64,000 nucleotides of DNA, from IMG/VR virus record IMGVR_UViG_3300030673_000004, positions 62,001 through 126,000 of that record; one strand, 5' to 3'. The first letter of the stretch is position 1. Each line of letters opens with the position of its first letter. A program made the position numbers and the translations under genes. Of this stretch, positions 9,957 through 34,545 are shown piece after piece. The notes below the pieces were generated by a model, which did not search any database, was not told the DNA's origin, and saw only the letters and a program-made list of their open reading frames with translations.

Positions 9957-10011
9957 AGCAAATCTTTCGGTTGAGAGTTCTAATACAATATACGAAAAAC
10001 ATGTACGTTTG

Positions 10012-11881: not shown

Positions 11882-11955
11882 AAAAATACCTCCAAGAACA
11901 AAGATACGTCAAAATCTAAAAATCAACAGATGCAAAAATAAAGATGTGATATTAA

Positions 11956-12774
11956 TCACAACGGTACATCTAAACCAGCAAGATCCTCGGGTATACTGTA
12001 AGCTACAGACAATTTACGAGCCAAATAAGAATCCACTAACTCAGAATTATCGGATATAGCCAATTTAGAGAATATAAAATCACTACCAGCTAAGGACAGC
12101 AAGCCAAAAAGATCTAAAACGTTTAGCTCACAACCTAGCCCAACAACTCGCGTTGTGCCCACCAAGGTATCATGGTACATATGGTAATGACCATGTAAAA
12201 TAAGTCGTGGCTGTATCGCAGCAGCTACGTTATCTAACGTAGCACGATTAGCCTCCCCTGCACTATATAAGTGCTTCAAATTAAAATCAATTGAAGTAGG
12301 AGCATCATGACAGACAAGAACATCACACCTAGGAGCACACAAAGTATGCATAATATCCTTGTAGCCAATACACTCCAGACCAGGAAAAACAGTAGCGCCA
12401 AGGACACGAGAAATGGCATCAATGGAATAAGCACCACCTAAAAAGACAAAATGTAACTTCTCAAAGATAAAATGAAATCCACGCGCTGCCCAAAACAACG
12501 AGGGTAATAGCTCATGAAAAGATAATACATCAGCGCGATGAGGCAGCATATAATGATCTTCATGATTACCATCAATAAAAACAACAGGTATCCCTGTCTC
12601 TTGAGCTAGCCGAGAACAAACACGAAGAAATCTACGAAACGCGGGAATACGCGGAAAATAACCAAAATCACCAACCTGAAGAATCCTATCAACAGATTGG
12701 AGACAAGCCAACTTAAACGCTAGCTCTATAGCAGCGATATCACCATGAATGTCACCAACGACTAAAATCTTCAT
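11956..12774 (-). CDS. Calcineurin-like metallophosphoesterase
   Basis: GDIHG, VGDFG, DGNHE, CHDAP, HGHYH. Confidence 0.9.
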   Translation of the reverse strand: MKILVVGDIHGDIAAIELAFKLACLQSVDRILQVGDFGYFPRIPAFRRFLRVCSRLAQETGIPVVFIDGNHEDHYMLPHRADVLSFHELLPSLFWAARGFHFIFEKLHFVFLGGAYSIDAISRVLGATVFPGLECIGYKDIMHTLCAPRCDVLVCHDAPTSIDFNLKHLYSAGEANRATLDNVAAAIQPRLILHGHYHMYHDTLVGTTRVVGLGCELNVLDLFGLLSLAGSDFIFSKLAISDNSELVDSYLARKLSVAYSIPEDLAGLDVPL

Positions 12775-13361: not shown

Positions 13362-14621
13362 CTATTTAGTTGGTGCTTTTGTTGTTGGAACTTTAACAGG
13401 CAGTTCTTTTGGAACCTGAAGCATAGCAACAGGAACACGCAAACGACGAATCTCACCAAATTCAGAGTGGTAGTCTACAACCTCAGTGGCTCGCTGCGCC
13501 CTGTAACCCTCACCGGCAGCATAAGCGTCACGTGGGGGCATGATAGGATGATTCTCAACAAGAAGCCCTTCGGACTCATCACGAGTAGTCAAATAAGTAC
13601 CACCTTGACGTGTCTGATGAATATGGCCACAATGACCATATCGGTACTTAGTCTGCCCCCACAATTCAGGGAAATCTGCAGATACAACAGATTGCAACCT
13701 GCGTGCCTGTATGCGGTCACCATGGGTAAACACAAGAAAGGTCTTTCCATGTACAATAGGGATTATGTTACTCGTAGGAACAACAATATGTACCTGAGGA
13801 GATTTCTCGTAAGCAGCCGCCAAAATCATAGAGGCAGCACAACTTGTATGATAATCATGATTACCAGGAACAAAAACAACTTCAACTTCAGGAGCGCGAC
13901 GAGCTGCTTCTTCTATAATAGAACGAAAAGCGAGCACGCCAAGCTGCAATGTATGCATCCAGCGACTGTCAACATCAAGGATATTCCCAGAACGCTCTGT
14001 GACAGGTGTGCGTGAATCTGCGTGCCAAAAATCGCCTAAGGAAGCTATGAGTATTTTCTGGACTTCACCGGGCGCAGGTAAACAATACTCAGCAGCACGC
14101 TTCAGTAAATTAAGACCTGCTTTAGTATCGTAGTCATCATCATTTGTTTCCTTACCCCAAGCGCGCATACCTAAATGATGATCGCTAAGCATCCAAGTGC
14201 GTAATATATTTTCTCTAGGTAGCTTTCGACAAACAGGTATCTTGGGAGCGGCACCCCGGACCTGATCTGCAAATTCTTGAGCCCACGCCTCAAATTCAGC
14301 TACATCAGGATGAAGACGACGCCACTCTTCTATAATACCCTTTTCGGAATGCACATGAACAGTTGTTTTGCTCATACGCATGCTTAGTGGGATAGGTACT
14401 TTAACTAATGATGAGTGCTCACCAGCATTTATGCAACGCTGCTCTACTCGCTTGTAGACATCGCGAACAGTACTACGAGCAAGCCCAAGCTGAGTCGCAG
14501 CGGTCCTTATAGCACCTGTAGAAATCACAGCAGCTATAATATCACGCTCTTTGGATGTCTCAACAAAGTGACTCAACTCAACAGGTATACTAACGCTAGA
14601 ACGACTCATGGATACCCCCAT
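13362..14621 (-). CDS. Metallophosphoesterase with N-terminal HTH
   Basis: IRTAATQLGLARSTVRD (HTH); SDHHLG, LGDFWH, PGNHD, THGD, GHIH. Confidence 0.85.
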   Translation of the reverse strand: MGVSMSRSSVSIPVELSHFVETSKERDIIAAVISTGAIRTAATQLGLARSTVRDVYKRVEQRCINAGEHSSLVKVPIPLSMRMSKTTVHVHSEKGIIEEWRRLHPDVAEFEAWAQEFADQVRGAAPKIPVCRKLPRENILRTWMLSDHHLGMRAWGKETNDDDYDTKAGLNLLKRAAEYCLPAPGEVQKILIASLGDFWHADSRTPVTERSGNILDVDSRWMHTLQLGVLAFRSIIEEAARRAPEVEVVFVPGNHDYHTSCAASMILAAAYEKSPQVHIVVPTSNIIPIVHGKTFLVFTHGDRIQARRLQSVVSADFPELWGQTKYRYGHCGHIHQTRQGGTYLTTRDESEGLLVENHPIMPPRDAYAAGEGYRAQRATEVVDYHSEFGEIRRLRVPVAMLQVPKELPVKVPTTKAPTK

Positions 14622-14660: not shown

Positions 14661-16940
14661 TTAATACAAATCTGGGCAAATCGAACACACAGGTGCTGCC
14701 ATAAAGGCATTGAACTTTCGGATAGCTCGATCATTCAGGCACGTTTTCAATGTATCCATAGAACAATTCTGGACATCAAACACATGAAGTATATGATATA
14801 CAAACGACAAACGTGATGGGTGTGACCAAGAATTATCATTTGCAGATATGGCAGAAATGAAACACTGCAGAAATTGGATCTGAAAATAAGTGGAAAAAGC
14901 TATAACACGAGAAGATACGCTGCTGTACCGACTATGAGACATAACATAAGAAGGCACATCATCAATACGCCTCTTAAGCGTCTTAAGATACGCACCTGCG
15001 ATAACTTTATACAAATGTGATATATCATCTGTAGAGTAAACAAGAGATGGACGTTCAAAACCAACAGCATCAAACCAGATATCGTTAAAGTAGCCGAGCA
15101 TCTCAATACCAGGCGCAATGAACTTACGGTCTGAAATCTCAAAAAACCTAGTCACACTCTCATACAATTTTGACGCAATGTGACGTGCAACGGTATCTGC
15201 ATCATGATTACTTAGAAGCTCTACAATTTCTTGAGTATACTCAGATTTCACAGTCTTATCCAAATAAGACAAAGTGTCTTCTTCAGAAGCTCCAGTTAAA
15301 ACAGTCACAGCAACAGCAGGAATAAAACCACGAGATACTTCACCGAAAAGGTCCTGACGTGCATCCACGACATCAGAATACTGACTCAAATTATCCATGT
15401 CCAAAAGACGATCAAAAATTGACGCCCCACTCACCCGACCATAGGAATAGGACAAAGTATGCAGTAACTCACGCTTATCCTCATTACCACGATAAGTAGT
15501 ACGAGAAGACTGAAATTCACGCAAGGTCCTGATAGACGAAGACCAAGGAGACACAGAAATCCGATGTACCATAACCTTAAAAATCTTTAAGCTCTTCAAA
15601 GCCAAAGGAAGCCAAATCCTTTGATACTCATGATAGTGCTGACGAGTAAAGAATAGCTTTAACAACTTAGGTACATCTAGAGCAGTAGCTCGGCACAAAC
15701 GAAACAATACAAGACCAACAAGTTCTGCAAAACCTGGCGTAGCTGCTCTTCTAGAGTCTTCAACACAAATACCGGGATACTCATCATTTCGGATATTGAT
15801 ATAACCAATAAAACGAATATCCTTATTATAGAAATTAAGACGCAAAAATGAATTGCGAGATAAGTTTCTAGCGTTTAAGCCAATCCAAAAATCACCAAAC
15901 TTAGCTACAGGCATGTCAATATCAGGAAGAGATCCCGACCCAGGTAAGGGTTTATTATTCCCAATATAACCAATATCTAAATCAGAAGGAATCCCATGAA
16001 GGCAGCGACGATATGCGGGACGATCATGGAAGGATAGCTGCGTATCCAAGGCTACTAGCCATGACAGTAATACATCTTTATTAGCTGCAATCCACACAGG
16101 ATCACATGCTAAATGAGCACACGTCATATACTCCTTCATTATAGCATAAACATATGAAGGATTTACAGAATTTAAGTAATCACCACCAATACCACGATAT
16201 TCAATAACACCATGAGATTGAAATTTAACTAAATTAATACTGACATGCCTATGCTTCGCAGCTAACCCTGTAAGACGTAAAATACCCCGAGCAGCCTCAG
16301 GCAAAAGAATATGATCTAAGCCTAATGAGGCAATACCGCAAAAAGATTTCAAGCGGGCTAGGGCATAAGAAAACAAGGACATGGTTGGAAAGCAATAGCT
16401 GTTTCCAAGGCGATTTACATGACGTAGATCACGCTGATCCAAGCAAGAAGTCAGCAACAAAAAAACCAAAGGATTAAAGTCATCACGAGTAATGGAAGAG
16501 GACGAAAATGTAAAATGGAGACCACAACTATCATTTGTTAAGCCGTTAACACGTTTTAACAAATCAAAAGATCTGCACAGTAACTTCTCACTATCTAAAA
16601 TAGAAACAACAGGGCTAACAACTTCAACAGGTAAGAAACGTGACCCATCAGTCAAATCCTCATAGTCTTCCTGCTGAGGATCAATAGATCCATCACGAGT
16701 AAAATGCCAGCATGTATAGTCAGCTTCCCCTTGATGCTTGTGACCAGCATAAACATTACAGACAGCCCCAATAGGCTGATCAAACTCACGCTGAAAAGCC
16801 GATGCTAAATCTTCACGAGAAGCACCAGGAACAGCAATAACGGTTTCAAACTCGAAACCGCAAGAATAACCGGCACGAGATAATTCAAGATCACTCATGA
16901 CAGGTACATCAAGGCTTTTATGTGCAAGAGTCAGACGCAT
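14661..16940 (-). CDS. Putative amidoligase (COOH-NH2 ligase, Amidoligase_2-like), paralog 3
   Basis: CGFEFE, WHFTRDGSI, VEVVSP, SCGLHF, HVSINL, IEYRGIGG; long unique C-terminus. Confidence 0.78.
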   Translation of the reverse strand: MRLTLAHKSLDVPVMSDLELSRAGYSCGFEFETVIAVPGASREDLASAFQREFDQPIGAVCNVYAGHKHQGEADYTCWHFTRDGSIDPQQEDYEDLTDGSRFLPVEVVSPVVSILDSEKLLCRSFDLLKRVNGLTNDSCGLHFTFSSSSITRDDFNPLVFLLLTSCLDQRDLRHVNRLGNSYCFPTMSLFSYALARLKSFCGIASLGLDHILLPEAARGILRLTGLAAKHRHVSINLVKFQSHGVIEYRGIGGDYLNSVNPSYVYAIMKEYMTCAHLACDPVWIAANKDVLLSWLVALDTQLSFHDRPAYRRCLHGIPSDLDIGYIGNNKPLPGSGSLPDIDMPVAKFGDFWIGLNARNLSRNSFLRLNFYNKDIRFIGYINIRNDEYPGICVEDSRRAATPGFAELVGLVLFRLCRATALDVPKLLKLFFTRQHYHEYQRIWLPLALKSLKIFKVMVHRISVSPWSSSIRTLREFQSSRTTYRGNEDKRELLHTLSYSYGRVSGASIFDRLLDMDNLSQYSDVVDARQDLFGEVSRGFIPAVAVTVLTGASEEDTLSYLDKTVKSEYTQEIVELLSNHDADTVARHIASKLYESVTRFFEISDRKFIAPGIEMLGYFNDIWFDAVGFERPSLVYSTDDISHLYKVIAGAYLKTLKRRIDDVPSYVMSHSRYSSVSSRVIAFSTYFQIQFLQCFISAISANDNSWSHPSRLSFVYHILHVFDVQNCSMDTLKTCLNDRAIRKFNAFMAAPVCSICPDLY

Positions 16941-16969
16941 AGATTCCTTATATATTTAAGCAACAACTG

Positions 16970-18256
16970 TCAAGTGTTACCTGCAACAATAGACTGAAGA
17001 TCAGAAATAATGCTAGTAGTATGCACAATATTCTTCACATAGTTATAAACTACATGCAGATCTCGCATCTCTTGATGCCGACTGTGAACAAGAGCACGCA
17101 GAATAGAAACAAAATGAGATGATGTTAAAAAGTCAAGCAAAGATTTTGCCCAAACAACGCGCTCTTCCGGTGTTCTTCCAGCAGTCAACCAGCGTCGAGG
17201 AGATACTGCAATCTGATGCAAGGGAAGAAAAGAACCAACAGTAGAGTGTCCTAAATGCTCTTTCCTAAAAGACAGCACTAAACCATGAACGGTATCTTTA
17301 GTGCAACGCATTTTAATACTGGGTTCCTGCGGTGAAGACCTAGGGTGAGGACCATCAAGGTCACAAACAGGGTATGTATTACTAGCAGCAGAACTAGTTG
17401 GGATCAACTCCTGCTCTGCAAAATAACGAGCAACAACTAAAGAGAGGCGCTCATGCTTAAGATGAGTAGCAGCAATCAAAGCACCCGATAAATGCTTCGC
17501 AATACCAATCAGAAGCTCCGGTGTTAGTAAAGTCAGCCAAGCACCGCCAATACCACGATACTCAACTAACTTGTTGTTGTTAGACAACTTGCAAGTATTC
17601 ACAGATACATACTTACCATAGTTGTGTAAAATTCGCTGCGACTCACATAAAGTAGCAACACTCTCCTTGCGGGTCAATGTATGATGTTTTCTATGTGCAT
17701 CAAAGCCGCCAACAGCGGATAAGGTCAGCCGTGTTGTTGCCTGACAGTAATGATTTGAAGAACGCCCAAAGTAGTTAAGTAACCCCATATCATCAGCCAG
17801 AGCACAAAACACATTAGGACGAAAAGTATCCCGTGAAAGACCAAGACACGAAAGTGATATATGTAACCCAGTAGATGGTCCTGTTTTACCACCAATACTC
17901 TGAACTAAGGCAAAAACAGACGTTAATTCGGCCAAAGCCTGATCATCCAGGACTGAAAATGTAGGAGAAATCAATTCAACAGGGCATGAACAACGATGAG
18001 ATGTTGTTATTGAACTATCTGATGTAACAGACCACTTATCATAGCTACGCGGACCATTATGATGAACACCATAGCCACCAGCTTGATCTGATACGCGACT
18101 AGACCCAAGAACAGCCAGAAGTCTATCTCGCACAGCAGTCCAATCAAGAGGGCTCGCAAACTCCAATTCCACACCAAATTTGGATTTGAATGTCTCCAAA
18201 TTTGTAAGTATGGATGGTAACGTAGCTACACGAGCATAGGACTCTAAAAAGTTCAT
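16970..18256 (-). CDS. Putative amidoligase, paralog 2
   Basis: FGVELEF, WSVTSDSSI, VELISP, STGLHI, YVSVNT, VEYRGIGG; ATG overlaps the upstream TGA. Confidence 0.8.
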   Translation of the reverse strand: MNFLESYARVATLPSILTNLETFKSKFGVELEFASPLDWTAVRDRLLAVLGSSRVSDQAGGYGVHHNGPRSYDKWSVTSDSSITTSHRCSCPVELISPTFSVLDDQALAELTSVFALVQSIGGKTGPSTGLHISLSCLGLSRDTFRPNVFCALADDMGLLNYFGRSSNHYCQATTRLTLSAVGGFDAHRKHHTLTRKESVATLCESQRILHNYGKYVSVNTCKLSNNNKLVEYRGIGGAWLTLLTPELLIGIAKHLSGALIAATHLKHERLSLVVARYFAEQELIPTSSAASNTYPVCDLDGPHPRSSPQEPSIKMRCTKDTVHGLVLSFRKEHLGHSTVGSFLPLHQIAVSPRRWLTAGRTPEERVVWAKSLLDFLTSSHFVSILRALVHSRHQEMRDLHVVYNYVKNIVHTTSIISDLQSIVAGNT

Positions 18257-20280
18257 GCAAATTCTCCCAAAAGGATTGGCTTTATCGCACGACAACCCAA
18301 CTGACGAGACAACTCATGAACAGCGCCCGTAACATACCAAGCACGTCGCATCGTTGTTGACAACTGAGCACCTGACTGTACTAGAGACTTCCTCAAAGAA
18401 CGAGTAATTCCTACCGTGTCGGAGTCAAACGAGCGCATTAGAAAGGGTGCAAGAAGTCTGCGAAGTTCTGCATAGGGAGTGAAATCAGTAGGCTGTGCAA
18501 AAACAGACATCACGTTCTCAACAGTAACAAAACTGAGTGCATCATTCCTAATGTAGTCAGAAAGGGTCGTGCAGTTCAAAGAACACTCAGGAAACAAGCA
18601 AACAAGAAGCATGTTGCGCGATACAATTTTCGTATCTTCCATACCAACCTGACGGAAAACACGATGAATATCCGAAGGACCGCAAGGATTTCCCTGGTGC
18701 AGAGCATCATCCATTATCTGAGTAACAACACGCTGAGTCATCGCAGGAAATGTTGTAGTACTCATATAGAACAAGACAGAATCCTTAGAACGTTGCATAG
18801 CAACACGTCGGACTCTATCTGACACGGAAGATACCCAGAGAGTATGGAGAGAAGCACGGTACATCTGGCGATATCGCGAAGTGCGCAGCACACGATTCAG
18901 AGAGGCTACAGAAGTCACCAACGGGGTAGCAGCAGAGGCATACTCACGCAAGAGACGCCCAGGGCTACAAGAACGCAGGGCTGCAATCAAAGAAGAAGAA
19001 AAGTCATTAGGGACAAAAGTCACCTGTGACCACTGATACAAAGACTCAAGTGCGCAAAAAATATCAAGCGCCTGACTCCGGTTTACACCAGAAGTAGATT
19101 GACGGATATTCCAGGATTCACCCGTCTTCTCCAAAGTTACCAAAGATGTACCAGAAGGCTCACTAAAACCAACAGAGGACAATGCACGAGGAGCCTTCAT
19201 AATAAACAACGAATTATCTCGCAGGTAAGCAGCATATGAAACACCCCGTACACGAGGCAACTTCCAGTAAAGGCCGCGAGAAGCTTCTGCATCAAGCAAA
19301 GAAGGAAAAACAGTTACGCGAGACGAGGGGAATAAAGAGTTTGATGGGTCCGTAGCTTGCAAAGCATAGCACAAGCGAGACTCGTAGATCGCAGACAGCA
19401 AGGGATGATCCAAAACACCACTAGCCACAAGAAAAGCTACACCAATACGACGAAACAAATCCTGCATAAAGGGCTCAGGATGCTCCAACCAGTTACCACC
19501 AGGAGAACGATACTCCATATAACCACGGCTAGATAAATTACTGGTATTAACAGAGTACCTGTCACTATAACCACTATCTCTAATAGCCTGTGCCATGCGT
19601 GTTCGCAAAGAACCACCCGACGCATTTAGAGCAGTTCGTACCAAATCAGGATTGTTACCCAACAATGACGTATAGAATACGTTAGCATAGCTATTATTCA
19701 AACGCCCACACTGAGACAAAACAAAGTGATCATCAACCAAAAGGCTAAAAAGCAGAGGATCAAAGTTTTCTCGATGAGGTGTATGAGCAGAAGAGACACC
19801 GACATGCATGCCACAGGATTCGTTTGTGTATGCCCTAATAGGTGTTTCACCATGTGCCCACCTATGGACTTTTAGATAAGTAGAAAACATATCCTGATAA
19901 TCCATCACAGGAGATACCAGTTCCAAATCAAAGGAACCAGTATCCCCATCGTCATCAAAATCAACATCATCCGGATCTAGCGAGCCATCACCTGTGAAAT
20001 GCCACTTAGTGTAACCATCGCCACGATGATCACCATACTCACGTGTAACGTGTCCAACCTCGCCACCAACAGCAGGAATGAAACTCTCAACACAATGCTG
20101 CAGATAACCACGCTCAGAATCAAAATCAGAACGATCTGGGTGCGTACCCGCAAGAATCATCTCATACTCGGCACCCAAACGAATTCCATGATGAGTAAGA
20201 TCTGCGTCAGACACGCTATCAAAGAGCTTAAGAGGAGAACGAAACAACTCGGGTGTGATTACAGAAGTAGGCATAGACAA
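18253..20280 (-). CDS. Putative amidoligase, paralog 1
   Basis: LGAEYE, WHFTGDGSL, LELVSP, SCGMHV, RYSVNT, MEYRSPGG. Confidence 0.78.
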   Translation of the reverse strand: MSMPTSVITPELFRSPLKLFDSVSDADLTHHGIRLGAEYEMILAGTHPDRSDFDSERGYLQHCVESFIPAVGGEVGHVTREYGDHRGDGYTKWHFTGDGSLDPDDVDFDDDGDTGSFDLELVSPVMDYQDMFSTYLKVHRWAHGETPIRAYTNESCGMHVGVSSAHTPHRENFDPLLFSLLVDDHFVLSQCGRLNNSYANVFYTSLLGNNPDLVRTALNASGGSLRTRMAQAIRDSGYSDRYSVNTSNLSSRGYMEYRSPGGNWLEHPEPFMQDLFRRIGVAFLVASGVLDHPLLSAIYESRLCYALQATDPSNSLFPSSRVTVFPSLLDAEASRGLYWKLPRVRGVSYAAYLRDNSLFIMKAPRALSSVGFSEPSGTSLVTLEKTGESWNIRQSTSGVNRSQALDIFCALESLYQWSQVTFVPNDFSSSLIAALRSCSPGRLLREYASAATPLVTSVASLNRVLRTSRYRQMYRASLHTLWVSSVSDRVRRVAMQRSKDSVLFYMSTTTFPAMTQRVVTQIMDDALHQGNPCGPSDIHRVFRQVGMEDTKIVSRNMLLVCLFPECSLNCTTLSDYIRNDALSFVTVENVMSVFAQPTDFTPYAELRRLLAPFLMRSFDSDTVGITRSLRKSLVQSGAQLSTTMRRAWYVTGAVHELSRQLGCRAIKPILLGEFA

Positions 20281-20448: not shown

Positions 20449-21525
20449 ATGCGAACGATGCCGTTCACCATAGTTACATGCTTCTATAAACTGTTTCAGG
20501 ATGCAGGTATCCGAGAAACTGTCAGAAACGAAGTAGCACGAGCTATTATACGTGGATGTGTCCGCATAAAATCCTATAGAGATCAGCGCAAAGCTATCAA
20601 AAACTTGATAGGTGACACTAGCGAACATCAAGTATATATAAAAGTTCAAGAACTCAAGCACTGCTATGAGATGCAGGTGCTTCTATGGAGAGCACTTTAC
20701 TGTTACATTGATACACAAGATATCTCCAAAGCAGCCTACCTATACCAGATGTCTCTGGCCGATCTAACTTGGGTCATACAACTACTATCAGAAACGCACG
20801 AGTTACAGCAAATACCCGATGTAGCACCAGCACACTGGACAACAACCCCAATAACACAACAAGATGTCTACGACATTGTACAGCACAGACGGGTACAAAG
20901 TACAATCCAAGGTCTACTACGCTACTCCAAAAGCGGTGTTGTTTGGGCGTTTGATCAAGGTATAACTAAAGAAGACTTAAAAGCGGATTTAGAATATAAG
21001 GCTATTGCTACTATACTTAGATATGAAGCAAGTCGCAGAGCAAAATGGCATCTCATAAATGTAGTTGTAATTTCTATGGGAAATGAACTAAACAACAAAA
21101 CACGTAAGTCTACATCGTTAGAATCCGGAAGAATTGTTGAAGAAACAGTAGCTGGGCCAAAAGAAAATGAACCCCAGCACACCCATGCGGCAGCTATGCA
21201 ACGCATAGTATCATTGGTTAGTACAAATGATGAAGGTGATGAATTTGAAATATCACGTGTGCCGTCAGATAATGATTTTGCAAGCCTAAGAAAAGTAACA
21301 GACATTATTGAGTGCATGAAAGAATCCCTCAATAAGCGCATACTTGACTACTTAGACGTAACAGTACTCGGAACACATAATGAACCATTTGAAACGTGGA
21401 TTGAACAGCAAGAAATAGAACATAAGCACCAACTAACTGATGATGCTATTGTCAAAAAAGCACGACAATTCTTCAAACTGACAGCTAAAGATATCAAACT
21501 AATGCAAGAGGCCCTAGTTGTCTGA
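20449..21525 (+). CDS. Hypothetical protein; weak sigma-factor region-2-like segment
   Basis: 358-aa ORF, first gene of the divergent unit; EDLKADLEYKAIATILRYE loosely resembles sigma region 2. Function is weak inference. Confidence 0.6.
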   Translation: MRTMPFTIVTCFYKLFQDAGIRETVRNEVARAIIRGCVRIKSYRDQRKAIKNLIGDTSEHQVYIKVQELKHCYEMQVLLWRALYCYIDTQDISKAAYLYQMSLADLTWVIQLLSETHELQQIPDVAPAHWTTTPITQQDVYDIVQHRRVQSTIQGLLRYSKSGVVWAFDQGITKEDLKADLEYKAIATILRYEASRRAKWHLINVVVISMGNELNNKTRKSTSLESGRIVEETVAGPKENEPQHTHAAAMQRIVSLVSTNDEGDEFEISRVPSDNDFASLRKVTDIIECMKESLNKRILDYLDVTVLGTHNEPFETWIEQQEIEHKHQLTDDAIVKKARQFFKLTAKDIKLMQEALVV

Positions 21526-23017
21526 GATACCTGTTACAGATGCTCCCATTCACCAAGTACTCAATGCCCTTAACCGTATTGAAGCAGAAAAGCATAGAAC
21601 TAAAAAAATTGAAATTTTACAAGAGCTCAAAGATAATCAAATAGCTCAGTGGATGTTCTATATAGACAGTCCTGTTAATAGACACTTTGGTATTAAAGTG
21701 TCTACAGAGGCTACACGACTATACTCAGGAACAGCTAAACCCGACGAAATGCTGACAAGGTTTGAGCAGTTTCAACAAATACTTGAAAAATTACTACAAT
21801 TAAAAATCACAAAACAAGATGCACTAGAACAGCTAGAACATTTATTAGAATCCTGCTCATACACAGAGCTATTCCGTGAAGGTGTTTGGTACACCCGTTT
21901 AATAAACAACGGACTCAGATTGGGCCTGCCTACATCAGCAGTAACAGAATGCTGGCCAGACCTCAAAATCACATCAACACTACCATACGCTCGATCTATA
22001 CTTGATACAACAGGATCTGTATCCGAGCACAAAAGAAAACAAATACAATATCCTTGCGTAGCAGAGCCTATTGTTGGTGGCATCCTCGCATCTGTAATCG
22101 TAGTTAACAGCAATTCATATGTTACAGCATTTGGAAGCCGTAAAATACCATGTTTGCAGCCATGGGCAGACACACTTGCTAGTTTTCTTATGGACGCACC
22201 ACCACTTGTAATTAATGGTGAGTTTATTACAAAAAAAGCATATGATGGGCTATCACGAACAAAACAACGAGAGCGCGTAATACAGCTATGCAAAACAAGT
22301 ATTTTTAATCAAGATGATAATACAGATCAGGCTAAGCAAGAACTCGTATTTATAATCTATGATATATTTACACTAGTATCTCTTCATACAGGTATGTTCA
22401 CACTACCCTATGGGCATGCTAAGGAGTCTTCCTTTTGCCGCTCTACAATACTATCAGCTTTAGCAAAAAAAGCTAGCCACCTAGACGTAACAATTAGATG
22501 TGTACATCAAATACTATGTTTTAACTTTGACGACTTAGAAGAAGCTCATAGGTTTTATTTAACACAAGGCTTCGCAGGAAGCATAATAAAGCCCTGTAAG
22601 GCACCCATAGTATTTAGACCATCTGAGTGCTTATTCAAATGGAAAGAAACAAAAAAGCAGATAGGATATATATTATCTATCTTCCACATCAAAGAAACTA
22701 TAGGAATTGAAGTTTTTGTACCCGATACAGGAATGACAGAACATCTGTACATACCGAATAAAGATGTGCGTGACTGGTTTCAAGAACACAAAAATAACCT
22801 AAACGGATACGCAGTTGAATTTAAGGCCACATCCACAGAAGGTACAGCAAAACTATGTGTACTAACTAAGTTAGTAGCTACACAAGAACCACTATCAGAT
22901 GTGCAAATTGCTGCCTTGAGTGAACGCTTCGGGATAGCACTAAATAGTGCAGAACAAATGTCCTTAAAGCAGTTTCAGACAGCGGCATATGACCTAACAG
23001 AGGAAGATAATGTCTAA
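21518..23017 (+). CDS. T4-type ATP-dependent DNA ligase homolog lacking the catalytic Lys (pseudoenzyme)
   Basis: N-terminus LNRIEAEKHRTKKIEILQELKDN; motif I reads AEPIVGG (not KxDG); INGEF, IIYDIF, GFAGSIIK, LFKWK. Confidence 0.85.
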   Translation: MSEIPVTDAPIHQVLNALNRIEAEKHRTKKIEILQELKDNQIAQWMFYIDSPVNRHFGIKVSTEATRLYSGTAKPDEMLTRFEQFQQILEKLLQLKITKQDALEQLEHLLESCSYTELFREGVWYTRLINNGLRLGLPTSAVTECWPDLKITSTLPYARSILDTTGSVSEHKRKQIQYPCVAEPIVGGILASVIVVNSNSYVTAFGSRKIPCLQPWADTLASFLMDAPPLVINGEFITKKAYDGLSRTKQRERVIQLCKTSIFNQDDNTDQAKQELVFIIYDIFTLVSLHTGMFTLPYGHAKESSFCRSTILSALAKKASHLDVTIRCVHQILCFNFDDLEEAHRFYLTQGFAGSIIKPCKAPIVFRPSECLFKWKETKKQIGYILSIFHIKETIGIEVFVPDTGMTEHLYIPNKDVRDWFQEHKNNLNGYAVEFKATSTEGTAKLCVLTKLVATQEPLSDVQIAALSERFGIALNSAEQMSLKQFQTAAYDLTEEDNV

Positions 23018-24485
23018 ATCATATCTAGAATACGTAAGTGAAGCTATTGAGGCATATAAAAACAAAGATGCAAAGACATTAGCTGCCTGTAAGCAATTAG
23101 CATTTACAGCACGAAGGTACCAAAAACAGAATAGCCAAAGCACAGATACAGTACTTAATCTCTACCCAATACTAGGTATTCATCAGTTAACAGAACTCAC
23201 TTGTAAGTATGAAGTCACATCAATTGAACAGTTCTATCAAGCCGTTCAGTCATATCAGCTAACAGATGTTATCGCTACAAATGCCTTGTGGCAGTGGCGT
23301 GCAGCGAAACAACGAATCCTGCGCACTAGCACCACAAATATTGTTGAACACATCAAACGTACACTCGCCAGAGTAGGCATAAAAACAACTGTAGTAGGGG
23401 AGTTCTCTAGACACAAGGATACAATAGCTAATCTAGAGTTTTGTATTGAAGTAGGATCACAAGATGAAATACTTTTAGCAAAAGCTACACTACAACAAGA
23501 ATTGCTAGCTGAAACTAAAATTACAGATATAGGTCTGAGTATAGATCTCAAAACAGACATATTTGATATTAACTGTTTCCTATATTTTGGAACACATCAA
23601 AATTTCTGCACGTGTTCAATATATCATATTGGACCTAAATGTTTTATTGATAAATTAAATCATAAGCTAGTTAGTCGTGGCTATGAATTAACAAGCACAG
23701 GATTACAAACACTAGAAGGCTTGCAAGTACCGTGTAGGTCGGAGAAGACTATATGGGATATAGTTGGATCTACCATACCCCCAACATCAGCACGTGATAG
23801 TATTGATGACATCATGTATGATACTACAAATCTCGTAACATATAAAACGAGTACAGGTGACACAGGAATAACCTATAGAGCAAAAGACTCAGCAAAAATA
23901 AAGCATTGCTTAGAAAATAAGAGTTTAACGCATGTAGCACTTATTATACAAGAGAATTCCTTAGATGCAGTAACACAAGCTATAGACCAGATACACATAC
24001 TAGTCAAAGATAGTGCTATTCCTGTCTATACAGGACTACTAGTAACATCAAACACACTAGAACATCTAAGTCTTGCAGCTAAAGTAGATTTTCTTATCAT
24101 AGAAGATGATGAAATCAATGCTCTATACAAAATAACACTACCCAAAGCAAGAAAGGTAGCTAAAAACATTATCATACGAAATCCCTTCATGTTCTCCCAA
24201 GGGATGTGTCTGACCAACTCATCTTTCCCAAAAGATGAAATTCTTACTATTCTAAACAAAAACAAAATAGCTATTGAGATAACAGGTAACTGCAACTACG
24301 CAGGAACGCCTGTTGACGCATGGAAAGACGTAATACAGACAAGGTGCGCTATAACCATAGGTTCGGCACAGTACGCAAAACAACAAACACAAAGCATAGT
24401 CTCAGCTAGAATAAAGTGCTGTCAAGCTCTCATAAGCCAACAACGTTTAATGGATGCGGCAGCCTTTGAAGAGTGGCTTAGGTAA
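23010..24485 (+). CDS. DNA polymerase X-PHP homolog with degenerate active sites
   Basis: VVGEFSRHKDTIANLEF (DxD changed to NLE), YHIGPKCF, GYELTSTGL, SEKTIW...IPPTSARD; PHP-like C-half lacks the HxH metal motif. Confidence 0.82.
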   Translation: MSKSYLEYVSEAIEAYKNKDAKTLAACKQLAFTARRYQKQNSQSTDTVLNLYPILGIHQLTELTCKYEVTSIEQFYQAVQSYQLTDVIATNALWQWRAAKQRILRTSTTNIVEHIKRTLARVGIKTTVVGEFSRHKDTIANLEFCIEVGSQDEILLAKATLQQELLAETKITDIGLSIDLKTDIFDINCFLYFGTHQNFCTCSIYHIGPKCFIDKLNHKLVSRGYELTSTGLQTLEGLQVPCRSEKTIWDIVGSTIPPTSARDSIDDIMYDTTNLVTYKTSTGDTGITYRAKDSAKIKHCLENKSLTHVALIIQENSLDAVTQAIDQIHILVKDSAIPVYTGLLVTSNTLEHLSLAAKVDFLIIEDDEINALYKITLPKARKVAKNIIIRNPFMFSQGMCLTNSSFPKDEILTILNKNKIAIEITGNCNYAGTPVDAWKDVIQTRCAITIGSAQYAKQQTQSIVSARIKCCQALISQQRLMDAAAFEEWLR

Positions 24486-24517
24486 AATAGACTACACCTC
24501 CTATCAGGAGGTGTCTT

Positions 24518-24907
24518 ATGGACTTAGAATCTGAGCTGCAACAGAAAAAGAGTAGTTTAATACGCATTGGAGTAATCGGTGTTATCCTGGTAGTACTGGG
24601 TGCTGTTATAGGACGAACATCCGCGCCTCTTGAAGGAGTTTATAGCTCCAAATGGGCACGAACCATAGACAGCTTAAAAGTTGTCAATGAACAACAGAAA
24701 AAACTTGCAGATACGGCTAAGATCCGCATTGACTCCCTACAGATCATTCTAAAAAAACAAAAAGAGCTAACTGCTAGCTTGTATGCCGATGTAGTTAATG
24801 CTAAGTCAAATAGGACAGTAGAACATAACAAAGTCCTTGTACTAAATGATGCAGATCTCATTGCTAAATTTCAAGATGAGATAAGCAAAGTTAAACAAGG
24901 ACACTAA
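24518..24907 (+). CDS. N-terminal TM plus coiled-coil protein (i-spanin-like)
   Basis: RIGVIGVILVVLGAVIG transmembrane helix followed by a long helical Lys/Gln-rich region. Confidence 0.5.
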   Translation: MDLESELQQKKSSLIRIGVIGVILVVLGAVIGRTSAPLEGVYSSKWARTIDSLKVVNEQQKKLADTAKIRIDSLQIILKKQKELTASLYADVVNAKSNRTVEHNKVLVLNDADLIAKFQDEISKVKQGH

Positions 24908-25551
24908 TGGGTGCTCCACACAAACGTGAGGGCCATACTGTTAAAAAGTATGAAAATGGCCGTTTCACATGTGAAATCTGTGGTAGAAACTATAGCCTTA
25001 CAGCTTTAGATGAGCACCACAAAATACCCCAAGAGATTGGTGGCCCCAACACAGATGACAACATAGCATCTCTCTGTGATGGCTGCCACCAGACATTACA
25101 TCGCATTGCATTTGATCTAGTGTCTCTTAGCAAAAAGAAACGCTCCGCCCAAGAAGAAGCCACAGATTACTTAACAGCGCTTGAAGTATCTGATGTAGGA
25201 ACAAGTACAGCAAAATTACTTGAGTTTGCTGTTTACCTAGCGCAAGCTAAGACACTAAAAAAAGATAAGTCATTAGCTGTTCCTGATGGCGATGTAACTA
25301 TTGAACTACCTCAAAGGTACAAAGCCTTACTCATACAAGCAGGTAGAGAAGTCAAAGATGGTGCAGGAAAACGACTAGGTATGAAGGGCATAGTCACACT
25401 GGCAGCACTAGACTATCTAAAAAAGAGGCATCCCGAGCTTAAAGCTGAAATAGAAAAATACATATTTGATGGAATTATCTATGCACAACGCTCTAAAGTA
25501 GACATAGAACAAACTGCAAACAAATATCAGTTTGAAGTACAAAACCTTTAG
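24907..25551 (+). CDS. HNH endonuclease domain protein
   Basis: CEICG...LDEHHKIPQEIGGPNTDDNIASLCDGCH. Confidence 0.85.
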   Translation: MGAPHKREGHTVKKYENGRFTCEICGRNYSLTALDEHHKIPQEIGGPNTDDNIASLCDGCHQTLHRIAFDLVSLSKKKRSAQEEATDYLTALEVSDVGTSTAKLLEFAVYLAQAKTLKKDKSLAVPDGDVTIELPQRYKALLIQAGREVKDGAGKRLGMKGIVTLAALDYLKKRHPELKAEIEKYIFDGIIYAQRSKVDIEQTANKYQFEVQNL

Positions 25552-30264: not shown

Positions 30265-30360
30265 GATGGGATAGCTCAATTGGTAGAGCGGCTCGCCCCC
30301 TTTAGGGATCGGGTGTGAAGGAGACTTCGTCGGTTGATGGTTCGAATCCATCGCTCATCT
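30265..30360 (+). ncRNA. Atypical tRNA-like RNA with expanded anticodon region and long variable arm
   Basis: GATGGGA..TAGCTCAATTGGTAGAGC; GCTCG[CCCCCTTTAGGGAT]CGGGT; variable arm GTGAAG-GAGA-CTTCGT; GATGG-TTCGAAT-CCATC. Confidence 0.7.
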
Positions 30361-32050: not shown

Positions 32051-32089
32051 CTTCATTTTTCATAATCACCATTGTTAAGGGAGTTACTT

Positions 32090-33478
32090 ATGCCTACCAT
32101 CGTTGAGAATGCTCACGGTGTTCGGGCTTACGAATTTGGAGATGAAGTGTCTCTTCGTAGGCTTGTTCTTGCGTCCTTGCTGACTGAAGATTCTTCAGAC
32201 ATGCAAAAGCAAATCGCTGACTTGGTGCCTCGTGTAAGTCCTACGTCTGTGATGAATCTGGCGATCACAGCTCGTAAGGATTATGCGCTACGCAAGGTTC
32301 CCTTGTTTTTGGTTCGTGAGATGTCTCGCTATGAAAACCATCGTCCCTATGTAGCAGATACTCTAGCTCAAGTTATTGAGCGTGCTGATGAGATGAGCAC
32401 TTTTCTATCCATGTATTGGGCAGGAAAGAATGTAGGCGAGGGGCGTGAGCCTCTTGCTAGGCAGGTTAAGCTTGGGTTGGGGCGTGCTTTTGGGAAGTTC
32501 AATGCTTTCTCTTTGGCTCGTTATGATCGTAATAGTGCTGCATTTTCCATGCAGGATGTTATTAGGATCGCGCATCCTCGACCTGAGTCTCCTGAGCAGG
32601 AAGTACTCTTTCGACAGATTGCTAAGGGTGAAGCTCTTCCTCCTGTAAAGGATTGGGAACACGAGCTATCTCAGTCAAAGGACAAGAAGGCTTCATGGGT
32701 TTCTCTTTTGGAGAACAAGCAGCTTGGTGGCCTTGCTCTGTTGAAGAACTTGCGTAACATGCTGCAAGCCGGTGTCTCTCAAAGTTTGATTGTCTCAACT
32801 ATTGCTCAGCATCCGTTCAAGTATGTTTTGCCCTTTCGGTTCATCTCTGCTCTTCGTGAGCTTGTGCTATCTGATGTAGTTGTCTCTAACGAACTGCGGG
32901 ATGCTTTAGAACAAGCAATGTTTCGCGGTTTGGTGGATTTTCCTAAGCTTGACGGAGATACCGTGTTCCTTGTTGATGTGTCTGGGTCTATGAGTCATCC
33001 TCTTGGGATGTCTTTCTCAGATCGGCACGGTAGGACTCATGCTAGCTCTATGACTCGATCTGATGGCGCTGCTGCTTTGACTATGATGCTGAATGAAATT
33101 TGTGATGTACCTCACATCTTTAAGTTTCATACGCGAATCATTCCAATTTCCGGGTCTCGCGGTTTTGCTCTAGGGTCTCAAGTTAACTATGCGCGGCAAA
33201 ACACACGTCTGGGTGACTGCTTAAAGCAGGCTCAGCATGAGATGTTGGTTAAGGGAATCACTCCTAAGCGTTTGATTGTTTTAACGGATGAGGAGTCTCA
33301 GGATCCTGTTGGGGAAGGATTCGCTCAGTATAACTACATGATCAACGTGAAGTCGGCTTCTTACAGTATTGCTTATAAGTCATGGATCCGCATGACTGGC
33401 TTTAGTGAGCATATTGTTAAGCTGCTTGTTGGGCATGAGCGGTTAGATAAGTATGTTAAGGAACATGTAGCATTGTGA
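32090..33478 (+). CDS. rsr: Ro60/Rsr TROVE-vWA RNA-binding protein
   Basis: LRRLVLASLL, LRKVPLFLVREM, VIERADEM, KFNAFSLARYDR, WEHELS, LALLKNLRNM, VLPFRFISA, VDVSGSM (MIDAS), LIVLTDEESQD; ATG with an AAGGGAG RBS. Confidence 0.93.
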   Translation: MPTIVENAHGVRAYEFGDEVSLRRLVLASLLTEDSSDMQKQIADLVPRVSPTSVMNLAITARKDYALRKVPLFLVREMSRYENHRPYVADTLAQVIERADEMSTFLSMYWAGKNVGEGREPLARQVKLGLGRAFGKFNAFSLARYDRNSAAFSMQDVIRIAHPRPESPEQEVLFRQIAKGEALPPVKDWEHELSQSKDKKASWVSLLENKQLGGLALLKNLRNMLQAGVSQSLIVSTIAQHPFKYVLPFRFISALRELVLSDVVVSNELRDALEQAMFRGLVDFPKLDGDTVFLVDVSGSMSHPLGMSFSDRHGRTHASSMTRSDGAAALTMMLNEICDVPHIFKFHTRIIPISGSRGFALGSQVNYARQNTRLGDCLKQAQHEMLVKGITPKRLIVLTDEESQDPVGEGFAQYNYMINVKSASYSIAYKSWIRMTGFSEHIVKLLVGHERLDKYVKEHVAL

Positions 33479-34159: not shown

Positions 34160-34512
34160 GGGGGTGTATTGGTTTCGACAGATTCTGTGAGAATGATAGC
34201 GCGTGTCGAGGGTCCAGGTGGCCTCGTAAAAACCTGGAAAAAGTCAAACGGCGAAGAGATCTACTCTTACGCTCTGGCTGTCTGAGAAATCAGATACCAG
34301 AACCTTGCAATGAGATGCTGTTGTAGTTGCTTGGTATAATCTAGACGGCTGGGTTACAGTAATGTTTGTAGTCTGTAACTAAGAAAATCAAACTACGGTG
34401 TGTATGAGTCTGTTCTTCGACGCATGCGCAGTTAAGATCAAAAGAAGAACTACACACGTAGTGTTTTCATTTAAGTAGTTTTTGGACGCGGGTTCGAGTC
34501 CCGCCACCTCCA
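34160..34512 (+). ncRNA. ssrA: tmRNA; tag (A)GEEIYSYALAV at 34250-34285
   Basis: GGGGGTG TATTGGTTTCGAC 5' end; GACGCGGGTTCGAGTCCCGCCACCTCCA 3' end with G3-U; internal tag ORF ending ALAV-stop. Confidence 0.95.
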
Positions 34513-34545
34513 TTGTGTAAATGAGATCTATTTAAGGAGATCTCT

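What the first reader, a model, noticed from the sequence alone, without database searches (positions are those of the whole stretch)
23010..24485. PolX-PHP with both catalytic centres degenerate, coupled to the dead ligase
Seen: the DxD dyad reads N141-L-E143 and the PHP metal-binding histidines are absent. The start overlaps the dead ligase stop by 8 nt. Established: many bacterial PolX proteins have non-canonical triads but usually keep PHP exonuclease activity. Inference: two adjacent pseudoenzymes from the same gap-filling pathway imply joint repurposing rather than random decay.
Basis: partly seen in the sequence, partly recalled or inferred. Interest (0 to 1): 0.7.

Follow-up and report, generated by a model that had tools for sequence, protein, structure and literature searches.

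The report
Doubly inactive PolX paired with lysine-less ligase
A 375-kb jumbo phage from peat carries a DNA-repair polymerase look-alike that has lost both of its catalytic sites, next to a DNA-ligase look-alike that has lost its catalytic lysine; the two genes are conserved, under selection and predicted to bind each other, so they look like a repurposed non-enzymatic complex rather than decaying genes.

Summary
ORF 23010-24485 (+) encodes a 491-aa protein with the full bacterial PolX-PHP architecture. Foldseek matches it to B. subtilis PolX at E 4e-19. The palm and thumb superpose on Pol beta at 2.4 A.

Both catalytic centres are missing:
- The polymerase Asp triad reads N141 / E143 / F190.
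- The PHP-like domain has no conserved histidine in any of six full-length family members.

The start overlaps the stop of the upstream gene by 8 nt. That upstream gene is a T4-type ATP-ligase homolog. Its motif I (KxDGxR) reads I-V-G-G-I-L in all nine family members (R for the first I in one). Motifs III to V are largely kept.

The pair is neither unique nor eroding:
- The same gene order occurs on contigs from at least six other jumbo-phage lineages. These are 26-72% identical in the PolX-like protein, and every full-length copy is intact.
- dN/dS against the closest relative is 0.10 for the ligase-like gene and 0.125 for the PolX-like gene.
- Strain-level variants are 20 synonymous to 9 non-synonymous, with no indels.
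- A complex prediction passes (score 0.75, best control 0.00).
- An intact ligase with a KLDG motif lies elsewhere in the genome.

Best reading: a non-catalytic heterodimer derived from a gap-filling and sealing module, probably a DNA-discontinuity binder or scaffold. Its actual function is not shown.

The parts
20449..21525 (+). First gene of the coupled trio (P0003, 358 aa). All-alpha protein of unknown function. Its stop overlaps the ligase-like start by 8 nt.
   Evidence: ORF map and translation. Eight homologs at 43-85% identity. dN/dS 0.067. No Pfam, PHROG, PADLOC or NCBIfam family. Only sub-threshold sigma-factor-like leads.
21518..23017 (+). T4-type ATP-dependent DNA-ligase homolog without the catalytic lysine (P0002, 499 aa; TTG start).
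   Evidence: phrog_114 ATP-dependent DNA ligase, E 5e-17. The family profile's best PDB match is T4 DNA ligase 6dt1, aligned over motifs IV-V. tblastn finds only T4-like phage ligases at 22-25% identity. Nine-member family at 36-77% identity.
22064..22087 (+). Degenerate ligase motif I: E183-P-I185-V-G187-G-I-L190, where active ligases have K-x-D-G-x-R.
   Evidence: Alignment with two annotated T4-like phage ligases (LKADGSR and LKADGAR) puts I185 on the Lys, G187 on the Asp and L190 on the Arg. This holds in the family members aligned; one has R for the first I.
22883..22957 (+). Family-specific C-terminal insertion of the ligase-like protein (aa ~456-480, with a conserved R/K-F-G motif). It is the predicted docking element for the PolX-like protein.
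   Evidence: Absent from the two active T4-like ligases in alignment A4. Residues 460-475 are in the predicted interface. G472 is invariant; F471 and R/K470 are nearly so.
23010..24485 (+). PolX-PHP-fold protein with both canonical catalytic centres absent (P0001, 491 aa).
   Evidence: Foldseek: Thermus and Deinococcus PolX at E 3e-17 to 1e-13; B. subtilis PolX at E 4.4e-19 over residues 6-490. VIA Z ~20 against Thermus PolX over 3-491. Family profile against ASFV Pol X, E 5e-7. Pfam DNA_pol_B_thumb hit in all six full-length members and one of the two fragments, above the curated cut-off in two.
23010..23017 (+). 8-nt overlap (ATGTCTAA) of the PolX-like start with the ligase-like stop, indicating translational coupling.
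   Evidence: Sequence read directly. The same kind of overlap (4 to 11 nt) is seen in relatives L002, L006, L010 and L011.
23310..23801 (+). Palm and thumb subdomains (aa 101-264).
   Evidence: Superpose on Pol beta residues 148-335 with rmsd 2.4 A over 163 residues, Z ~18.
23430..23438 (+). Former catalytic dyad, now N141-L142-E143. The third former carboxylate position is F190 (23577-23579).
   Evidence: HMM alignment to ASFV Pol X D49, D51 and D100. Column contents across the family.
23847..24482 (+). PHP-like (beta/alpha)7 barrel (aa 280-491) without the His/Asp/Glu metal-ligand set. Conserved instead: D284, G286, D360, E365, R390-N391-P392, G426, Y430, S452-A453.
   Evidence: Residues 280-490 alone match stand-alone PHP phosphatases at E 4e-5 to 1e-4, TM by hit 0.54-0.57. 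Seven strands in the model. No conserved His column. No Pfam PHP hit.
24494..24514 (+). Conserved hairpin between the PolX-like stop and the next gene. It pairs CCTCC with the GGAGG Shine-Dalgarno sequence of that gene and probably marks the end of the three-gene unit.
   Evidence: Found by the terminator scan and read directly. A hairpin at the same place in six lineages, with different stem sequences (-14 to -30 kcal/mol).
24518..24907 (+). 129-aa protein with one N-terminal transmembrane helix and a coiled coil (P0030). Coupled to the HNH gene by a 1-nt overlap.
   Evidence: Translation. A small gene (123-150 aa where called) follows the PolX-like gene on every relative contig that extends past it, and is followed by the HNH gene where the contig reaches. 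No family hit.
24907..25551 (+). HNH endonuclease with an intact motif (P0031, 214 aa). By far the most conserved gene of the cluster.
   Evidence: Pfam HNH, E 1.7e-9. McrA HNH match, E 2.6e-5, with the catalytic His/Asn/His aligned. 75-100% identity across relatives in which the PolX-like protein falls to 26%; dN/dS 0.01.

Best explanation
The ORF encodes a pseudoenzyme. It is a full-length bacterial-type PolX-PHP protein in which neither the two-metal polymerase site nor the PHP metal cluster exists any more. It is made together with a T4-type ATP-ligase homolog that cannot self-adenylylate, and probably in stoichiometric complex with it.

Shown:
- The folds of both proteins.
- The loss of the canonical catalytic residues across whole families.
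- Purifying selection on both genes.
- Conserved gene order and translational coupling.
- An intact ligase elsewhere in the genome.

Predicted: a heterodimer. In the model, the ligase-like OB domain and a family-specific C-terminal R-F-G segment dock on the PolX-like palm, against its former dNTP-binding G-E-F-A-R-H loop, and on the PHP barrel.

Inferred: the pair descends from an active PolX plus ligase gap-filling and sealing module. It now works without synthesis, exonucleolysis or sealing, as a binder or scaffold. Most likely it recognises a DNA discontinuity (nick, gap or end) in phage DNA metabolism, possibly together with the upstream 358-aa protein. The target and the biological process are not known.
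For: Fold:
- Searches support the PolX-PHP fold. rows 26-30 support a PHP fold for the C-terminal domain on its own.
- Searches support the ligase fold of the neighbour.

Catalytic loss across the families:
- (polymerase triad).
- (PHP ligands).
- (ligase motif I).

Not decaying:
- Seven PolX-like homologs were found among 1.84 billion representatives; five are full length, two are shorter fragments, and none shows an internal stop.
- Two further intact copies lie on L010 and L011.
- dN/dS is 0.125 for PolX-like, 0.10 for ligase-like and 0.067 for the upstream gene.
- Strain variants are 20 synonymous to 9 non-synonymous, with no indels.

Coupling:
- 8-nt overlaps join three successive genes, and overlaps are kept in relatives.
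- A conserved hairpin closes the unit.

Binding:
- Predicted complex score 0.75 (three runs: 0.75, 0.74, 0.77) against a best control of 0.00. This mark was reached by 58 of 80 solved complexes and 2 of 110 mismatched pairs.
- The runs share at least 91% of contacts, and partner pLDDT is at least 86.
- The ligase segment at the interface is an insertion absent from active T4-like ligases.

Redundancy: an intact ligase with TKLDGVR lies at G000:C1:246366-247361.

Precedent:
- The E. coli Pol III PHP domain lost its metal ligands and keeps a structural role (PMC3666897).
- Noncanonical PolXs lost polymerase activity (PMC9226535).
Against: - No experiment supports any of this. Inactivity is inferred from residues.
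- Conserved polar residues persist at both former sites: E131, D137 and E143 in the palm; D284, D360, E365, R390 and N391 at the barrel strand ends. Ligase motifs III, IIIa, IV-Lys and V also persist. A rewired catalytic or ligand-binding site is therefore possible.
- DNA binding is not shown. No HhH Pfam domains are detected. The hairpin glycine of the putative HhH is not conserved. The proteins are near neutral, unlike basic PolXs.
- The predicted interface is no more conserved than the protein average.
- The alignments behind the complex job were shallow (8 and 9 rows) and were my own, so the calibration counts hold only roughly.
- Synteny among related phages with collinear genomes is weak evidence of functional linkage.
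Confidence: 0.5

Rival explanations
1. Rewired enzymes. One or both proteins are still catalytic or ligand-binding, but with a different chemistry. The ligase-like protein could bind a nucleotide or a pre-adenylylated 5' end through the retained motifs III, IIIa, IV-Lys and V, and so perform only a late ligation step or a de-adenylylation. The PHP-like barrel could use the new D284/D360/E365/R390/N391 cluster as a hydrolase or phosphate-binding site.
For: Conserved residues sit where the old sites were, at the C-terminal strand ends of the barrel, and E131/D137/E143 sit in the palm. Ligase motifs III (NGEF), IIIa (YD), IV (IIKP) and V (FKWK) are invariant or nearly so. It is my own knowledge, not tested here, that lysine-less ligase mutants can seal pre-adenylylated nicks.
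Against: The metal-binding Glu of ligase motif IV is also replaced by A, S or D, and the motif I Asp and Arg are gone. There is no conserved carboxylate triad in the palm, and the third position is hydrophobic. None of the nine PHP ligand positions can be filled by a conserved His. The retained motifs may be structural only.
Confidence: 0.2
2. A protein-level scaffold, decoy or counter-defence factor unrelated to DNA binding. The two folds are kept only as stable shapes. They could, for example, sequester a host repair or defence protein that normally docks on PolX or ligase, or bind a nucleotide signal.
For: The PolX-like protein evolves fastest in the cluster: 26% identity where the HNH protein keeps 75%. 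Fast evolution is typical of host-interaction proteins. The DNA-binding hallmarks (HhH, basic charge) are weak or absent.
Against: No match to any PADLOC model. The ligase-like protein keeps all three DNA-encircling domains and is well conserved, with 64% mean column identity. No host partner is identifiable, because the phage is uncultured.
Confidence: 0.2
3. Random decay: two recently inactivated genes on their way to loss.
For: Only the absence of catalytic residues supports this.
Against: Intact full-length copies occur in at least seven lineages down to 25-26% identity. dN/dS is 0.10-0.125. Synonymous changes exceed non-synonymous ones and there are no indels in natural populations.
Confidence: 0.02
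4. Wrong family assignment: the protein is not PolX-derived at all.
For: Single-sequence Pfam evidence is weak (thumb domain, E 0.0012, below the cut-off). The Pfam PHP model does not match.
Against: Four independent lines agree. These are profile against PDB, Foldseek PDB and Swiss-Prot models, VIA and language-model neighbours. Two family members pass the Pfam cut-off.
Confidence: 0.02

Closest known systems
Bacterial PolX (PolX1: 8-kDa/fingers, palm, thumb and C-terminal PHP), e.g. B. subtilis YshC and Thermus thermophilus PolX
   Same: Same domain order and folds over nearly the whole length. The thumb motif Y-x-T-G-P..F is recognisable.
   Different: All three catalytic Asp are replaced, and the dNTP-contacting Ser, Asn and Arg equivalents are replaced. 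The N-terminal region is shorter and has no detectable HhH domains. No PHP metal ligands remain. Sequence identity is 12-15%.
Noncanonical prokaryotic PolXs (Prostova et al. 2022, PMC9226535)
   Same: The polymerase active site is substituted, so polymerase activity is presumably lost. Some are encoded next to ligase genes: LigD in Alphaproteobacteria, and an ATP-dependent ligase next to canonical archaeal PolXs.
   Different: Those proteins keep a functional PHP 3'-5' exonuclease. PHP ligands are conserved in 95% of bacterial PolX1 (PMC12926913). Here the PHP site is gone as well, the neighbouring ligase is also inactive, and the carrier is a phage.
PHP domain of E. coli DNA polymerase III alpha (Barros et al. 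2013, PMC3666897)
   Same: A PHP barrel that has lost metal-coordinating residues and is retained for a structural role.
   Different: That domain belongs to an active C-family replicase. Here the whole protein lacks a canonical active site.
T4 DNA ligase (gp30) and T4-like phage ATP-dependent ligases
   Same: The partner protein shares the N-terminal DNA-binding domain, the nucleotidyltransferase domain with motifs III-V, and the OB domain.
   Different: Motif I Lys, Asp and Arg and the motif IV Glu are replaced. There is an extra C-terminal insertion that is predicted to hold the PolX-like protein.
Stand-alone ligase DNA-binding domain of subgroup 2.1 jumbo phages (Iyer et al. 2021, PMC7824862)
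   Same: A non-catalytic derivative of an ATP-dependent ligase kept by jumbo phages.
   Different: That is only the alpha-helical domain, in phages without a ligase of their own. Here the whole three-domain ligase body is kept, beside an intact ligase elsewhere in the genome.

Membership tests
Family X DNA polymerase (PolX) | Pol beta-type palm and thumb fold | tested here: met
   rmsd 2.4 A over 163 residues against Pol beta, Z ~18. Profile hit to ASFV Pol X at E 5e-7. Pfam thumb domain above the cut-off in two members.
Family X DNA polymerase (PolX) | Three catalytic carboxylates (D-x-D plus a third Asp) that bind two metals | tested here: not met
   N141 / E143 / F190. The first and third positions are never acidic in full-length members.
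Family X DNA polymerase (PolX) | dNTP-binding residues (G-S-x-R-R loop; thumb Asn and Arg) | tested here: not met
   The loop reads G-E/D-F-A-R-H. The Ser is replaced by an acidic residue and only R134 is kept. By my reading of the thumb motif, the positions equivalent to Pol beta N279 and R283 are I213 and N217. The Pol beta numbering is from my own knowledge.
Family X DNA polymerase (PolX) | Helix-hairpin-helix DNA-binding motifs in the N-terminal domains | tested here: inconclusive
   No HHH_5 or HHH_8 Pfam hit in any member. A motif-like L-G-I stretch exists, but its Gly is not conserved. The helical N-terminus still aligns to the PolX N-terminal domains structurally.
PHP (polymerase and histidinol phosphatase) superfamily | Seven-stranded beta/alpha barrel fold | tested here: met
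   Residues 280-490 match stand-alone PHP phosphatases at E 4e-5, TM by hit 0.54-0.57. Seven strands in the model.
PHP (polymerase and histidinol phosphatase) superfamily | Metal-ligand set H-H-D-H-E-H-[C/H]-D-H (as given in PMC12926913) | tested here: not met
   No column with a conserved His. One member has a single His in the whole domain. No Pfam PHP match at E 0.1.
Noncanonical PolX (polymerase-dead, exonuclease-active) | Retained functional PHP exonuclease site | tested here: not met
   As above. The definition is from PMC9226535.
ATP-dependent DNA ligase (the neighbouring gene) | Homology and three-domain architecture | tested here: met
   phrog_114 at E 5e-17 over residues 11-377. T4 ligase motifs IV-V aligned. 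Aligns with annotated T4-like ligases.
ATP-dependent DNA ligase (the neighbouring gene) | Motif I lysine nucleophile (KxDGxR) | tested here: not met
   I/R-x-G-G/S-x-L in all nine members.
ATP-dependent DNA ligase (the neighbouring gene) | Enzymatic adenylylation and nick sealing | not testable with these tools
   Needs an [alpha-32P]ATP labelling assay and a nick-joining assay.

The most novel reading that the evidence does not exclude
A fossil gap-filling and sealing module has been exapted as a dedicated three-protein sensor of DNA discontinuities. The ligase-like ring recognises a nick or end without sealing it. Its lineage-specific tail plugs the former dNTP pocket of the PolX-like protein. 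The complex, with the upstream all-alpha and possibly sigma/HTH-like protein, then marks or shields such sites for a phage-specific process. That process could be transcription licensing, terminal-repeat formation or packaging, or protection from host ligase, nucleases or defence sensors.
Probability: 0.2. Interest if true: 0.8.

Novelty: new variant of a known kind. Interest (0 to 1): 0.6.

Why it matters
Polymerase-dead PolXs are known, and they keep their PHP nuclease. Metal-free PHP domains are known only inside active replicases. A PolX-PHP protein that lacks both centres, is still under purifying selection, and is coupled to a lysine-less ligase would be a clear natural example of a whole repair module turned into non-enzymatic parts.

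It also gives a testable pair: two soluble proteins of about 55 kDa with a confident predicted interface. This pair could show what the PolX and ligase scaffolds can do without chemistry. It also points to an unexplored function in a clade of uncultured peat and freshwater jumbo phages.

Tried and rejected
- DNA and protein searches of cultured phages with the region, the PolX-like protein and the HNH protein found nothing. A viral-contig pattern scan also found no relative. No cultured relative is therefore available.
- The word-indexed protein search found only the protein itself. The exhaustive search was needed to find the family.
- Single-sequence PDB searches were uninformative.
- Interface conservation gave no support for the predicted complex. 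Interface columns are not more conserved than average: permutation p = 0.91 for the ligase-like protein and 0.99 for the PolX-like protein.
- The sigma-factor idea for the upstream 358-aa protein stayed sub-threshold everywhere. This covers language-model and Atlas-structure neighbours, Foldseek at E ~1 and VIA at Z 5-7 on a helical model. The PDB profile and Pfam gave no hit. It is kept only as a lead.
- The charge and pI analysis did not discriminate DNA binding.
- No RNA-seq run holds the locus, so expression could not be checked.
- PADLOC and NCBIfam gave nothing for the three coupled genes.
- There is no Ku gene in the genome, so a phage NHEJ set is not supported.
- Literature searches for an inactive ligase plus polymerase pair in phages found nothing relevant.
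Full report
**Context**

The window is bases 62001-126000 of a 375,537-bp virus record with direct terminal repeats, that is, a complete jumbo phage genome. DNA runs that hold the locus are peat metagenomes. Near-identical strains occur in freshwater metagenomes, and traces occur in wastewater metagenomes. No cultured phage resembles the region at the DNA or protein level.

**The observation**

ORF 23010-24485 (+) is open and encodes 491 aa. Its ATG lies 8 nt before the end of ORF 21518-23017, in the sequence ATGTCTAA, behind a GAGGA ribosome-binding site.

A single-sequence Pfam scan gives only a sub-threshold DNA_pol_B_thumb hit, at E 0.0012. An exhaustive HMMER search of 1.84 billion representatives found seven relatives:
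- five are full length (483-500 aa, 25-50% identical);
- two are shorter fragments.

Two more intact copies lie on contigs found through the neighbouring gene. All six full-length members and one of the two fragments hit the Pfam thumb model, two of them above the curated cut-off.

**Fold of the PolX-like protein**

A profile of the family matches ASFV Pol X at E 5e-7 and Pol beta at about 1e-3.

An AlphaFold2 model built on the family alignment has mean pLDDT 81.6. Its structural matches are:
- Thermus and Deinococcus PolX at Foldseek E 3e-17 to 1e-13 over about 540 columns;
- B. subtilis PolX at E 4.4e-19 over residues 6-490;
- Pol beta residues 148-335 on model residues 101-264, with rmsd 2.4 A and Z ~18;
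- stand-alone PHP phosphatases on residues 280-490 alone, at E 4e-5 to 1e-4 and TM by hit 0.54-0.57.

Language-model neighbours are all PolX-PHP clusters. The PolX-PHP architecture is therefore established.

**Both catalytic centres are gone, family-wide**

In the profile alignment to ASFV Pol X, the three catalytic Asp residues (D49, D51, D100) fall on N141, E143 and F190. Across the family these columns read as follows:

| Former Asp | Residue in this protein | Residues across the family |
|---|---|---|
| D49 | N141 | N/A/N/R/T/A/S/K |
| D51 | E143 | E/E/Q/E/E/E/T/E |
| D100 | F190 | F/F/S/V/C/V/S |

The G-S-x-R-R triphosphate loop reads G-E/D-F-A-R-H.

In the PHP-like domain no alignment column holds a conserved His, and one member has a single His in the whole domain. 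The canonical ligand set is H-H-D-H-E-H-[C/H]-D-H (PMC12926913). The Pfam PHP model finds nothing in the genome at E 0.1, although it matches in all 14 control genomes.

Other residues are invariant instead: D284, G286, D360, E365, R390-N391-P392, G426, Y430 and S452-A453. By the model's strand positions, these lie mostly at the C-terminal strand ends, where the old site was. The pocket is remodelled rather than randomised, which keeps a rewired-site rival alive.

**The neighbouring ligase-like gene**

ORF 21518-23017 matches phrog_114 (ATP-dependent DNA ligase) at E 5e-17. Its nine-member family is 36-77% identical, with 64% mean column identity.

The family aligns best with T4 DNA ligase in the PDB, through motifs IV and V. 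Among cultured phages it matches only T4-like phage ligases, at 22-25% identity.

Aligned with two annotated active ligases:

| Motif | Active ligases | This family |
|---|---|---|
| I | L-K-A-D-G-S/A-R | P-I-V-G-G-I-L (Lys, Asp and Arg lost; one member has R for the first I) |
| III | D-G-E | N-G-E-F (the Glu kept) |
| IIIa | W-D | Y-D (kept) |
| IV | E-G-I-I-L-K | A-G-S-I-I-K (the Glu lost, the Lys kept) |
| V | K-F-K | F-K-W-K (kept) |

The family also carries a C-terminal insertion (aa ~456-480, with a conserved R/K-F-G motif) that the active ligases lack.

The genome has an intact small ATP-dependent ligase elsewhere, at G000:C1:246366-247361, with motifs TKLDGVR, LDGEF, EGGMLR and LLKVK. 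Sealing activity is therefore supplied separately.

**Neither unique nor eroding**

The same arrangement is found on contigs from other samples:
- three Amidoligase_2 genes on the minus strand;
- then, on the plus strand, a ~360-aa gene, the ~500-aa ligase-like gene, the ~490-aa PolX-like gene, a small gene (123-150 aa) and a 214-aa HNH gene.

Not every contig reaches every gene, because several are short. Short start/stop overlaps are kept between the first three plus-strand genes.

Comparison of the window with its closest relative, L010 (dS ~1.4-1.6, close to saturation):

| Gene | dN/dS |
|---|---|
| upstream 358-aa gene | 0.067 |
| ligase-like | 0.10 |
| PolX-like | 0.125 |
| 129-aa gene | 0.12 |
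| HNH | 0.01 |

Contigs of near-identical strains from four other runs (three freshwater, one peat) show 29 single-base differences in the PolX-like gene. Twenty are synonymous and nine are non-synonymous. There are no indels or stops.

**Do the two proteins bind?**

The complex prediction gave a score of 0.75 (runs 0.75, 0.74, 0.77) against a best control of 0.00. This mark was reached by 58 of 80 solved complexes and 2 of 110 mismatched pairs. The counts hold only roughly here, because my own shallow alignments were used. The runs agree in at least 91% of contacts, and partner pLDDT is at least 86.

The predicted interface joins two surfaces:
- on the ligase-like protein, the OB domain (387-445) and the family-specific insertion (460-475);
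- on the PolX-like protein, the palm (109-135, 147-149, 196-203), the thumb (243-246), the linker (278-279) and the PHP barrel (303-305, 460-468).

The conserved R470-F471-G472 of the ligase tail touches F132, S133 and H135 of the former dNTP loop.

The interface as a whole is not more conserved than the rest of either protein. The prediction therefore stands alone, and it supports binding without showing it.

**Limits of the unit**

A hairpin between the PolX-like stop and the next gene pairs CCTCC with that gene's GGAGG. It is present in six lineages with different stem sequences, and in some it is followed by a T-run. The three overlapping genes are thus the likely functional unit.

The downstream pair is coupled separately by a 1-nt overlap. 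It consists of a 129-aa protein with one transmembrane helix and a coiled coil, and the HNH protein.

The HNH motif is intact. The protein is 75-100% identical across relatives in which the PolX-like protein drops to 26%.

The upstream 358-aa protein is all-alpha, with a model pLDDT of 66. It has only sub-threshold resemblance to sigma factors.

**Interpretation**

The data fit a pseudoenzyme pair derived from an active PolX plus ligase module. Such active gene pairs exist:
- canonical archaeal PolX next to an ATP-dependent ligase;
- noncanonical PolX next to LigD (PMC9226535).

The most likely present role is a non-catalytic complex that binds or scaffolds at DNA nicks, gaps or ends. That last step is inference. 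DNA binding is not shown, HhH motifs are degenerate, and the proteins are near neutral.

Two rivals remain open:
- rewired active or ligand-binding sites;
- a protein-level decoy or scaffold.

Simple decay is excluded.

**Comparison with known systems and novelty**

Polymerase-dead PolXs keep their PHP exonuclease (PMC9226535). PHP ligands are conserved in 95% of bacterial PolX1 (PMC12926913). A metal-free PHP domain with a structural role is known in E. coli Pol III alpha (PMC3666897). Jumbo phages with a stand-alone ligase DNA-binding domain are known (PMC7824862).

I found no report of a PolX-PHP protein lacking both centres, or of its coupling to a lysine-less ligase. I therefore rate this a new variant of a known kind, of moderate to high interest.

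Noticed in passing
window 29533-55819 (+): An island of 34 tRNA genes covers most amino acids, and a full-length tmRNA lies at 34160-34515 (178.7 bits). All are on the plus strand, just downstream of the module.
   Followed up: partly
window 32072-33478 (+): A Ro60/TROVE-domain RNA-binding protein homolog (phrog_850 at E 9e-32; Pfam TROVE at E 1e-11) sits inside the tRNA island. Ro60 proteins usually act with Y RNAs. No Y RNA family reached Rfam's gathering score in the window.
   Followed up: no
window 30265-30360 (+): A 96-nt tRNA-like gene for which ARAGORN reports an irregular anticodon loop ('tt' at position 38). Rfam tRNA scores it at only 36.8 bits. It may carry an intron or be an unusual tRNA.
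   Followed up: no
window 14661-20280 (-): Three consecutive Amidoligase_2 paralogs (759, 441 and 675 aa) are transcribed divergently from the module and are syntenic with it on the relative contigs that reach that side. In L010 and L011 the middle paralog is called as two genes (127+275 aa and 184+275 aa). A GATase-like protein (9201-10043), two metallo-hydrolases (11054-12774) and an Mre11/SbcD-like nuclease (13362-14621) lie further on.
   Followed up: partly
window 24494-24514 (+); L010, L002, L011, L006, L007 at the same intergenic place: A hairpin sequesters the GGAGG ribosome-binding site of the 129-aa gene. It is kept in six lineages with different stem sequences (-14 to -30 kcal/mol). 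It is either a terminator or a translational control element.
   Followed up: partly
window 24907-25551 (+): The 214-aa HNH endonuclease is extraordinarily conserved: dN/dS 0.01, and 75-100% identity where its neighbours fall to 26-50%. It is translationally coupled to a small membrane-anchored coiled-coil protein (24518-24907). Its role is unknown.
   Followed up: partly
G000:C1:246366-247361 (outside the window): An intact small ATP-dependent DNA ligase with all motifs (TKLDGVR and the rest) is presumably the phage's working ligase.
   Followed up: yes
window 20449-21525 (+): For the first gene of the coupled trio (358 aa, all-alpha), sigma-factor chains recur among sub-threshold structural and language-model neighbours (region 130-220). 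No hit is significant.
   Followed up: partly
window 227-4785 (-): Two genes for T4-type topoisomerase II subunits (phrog_551 at E 1e-67; phrog_543 at E 7e-118). This indicates a T4-like DNA metabolism set in this phage.
   Followed up: no
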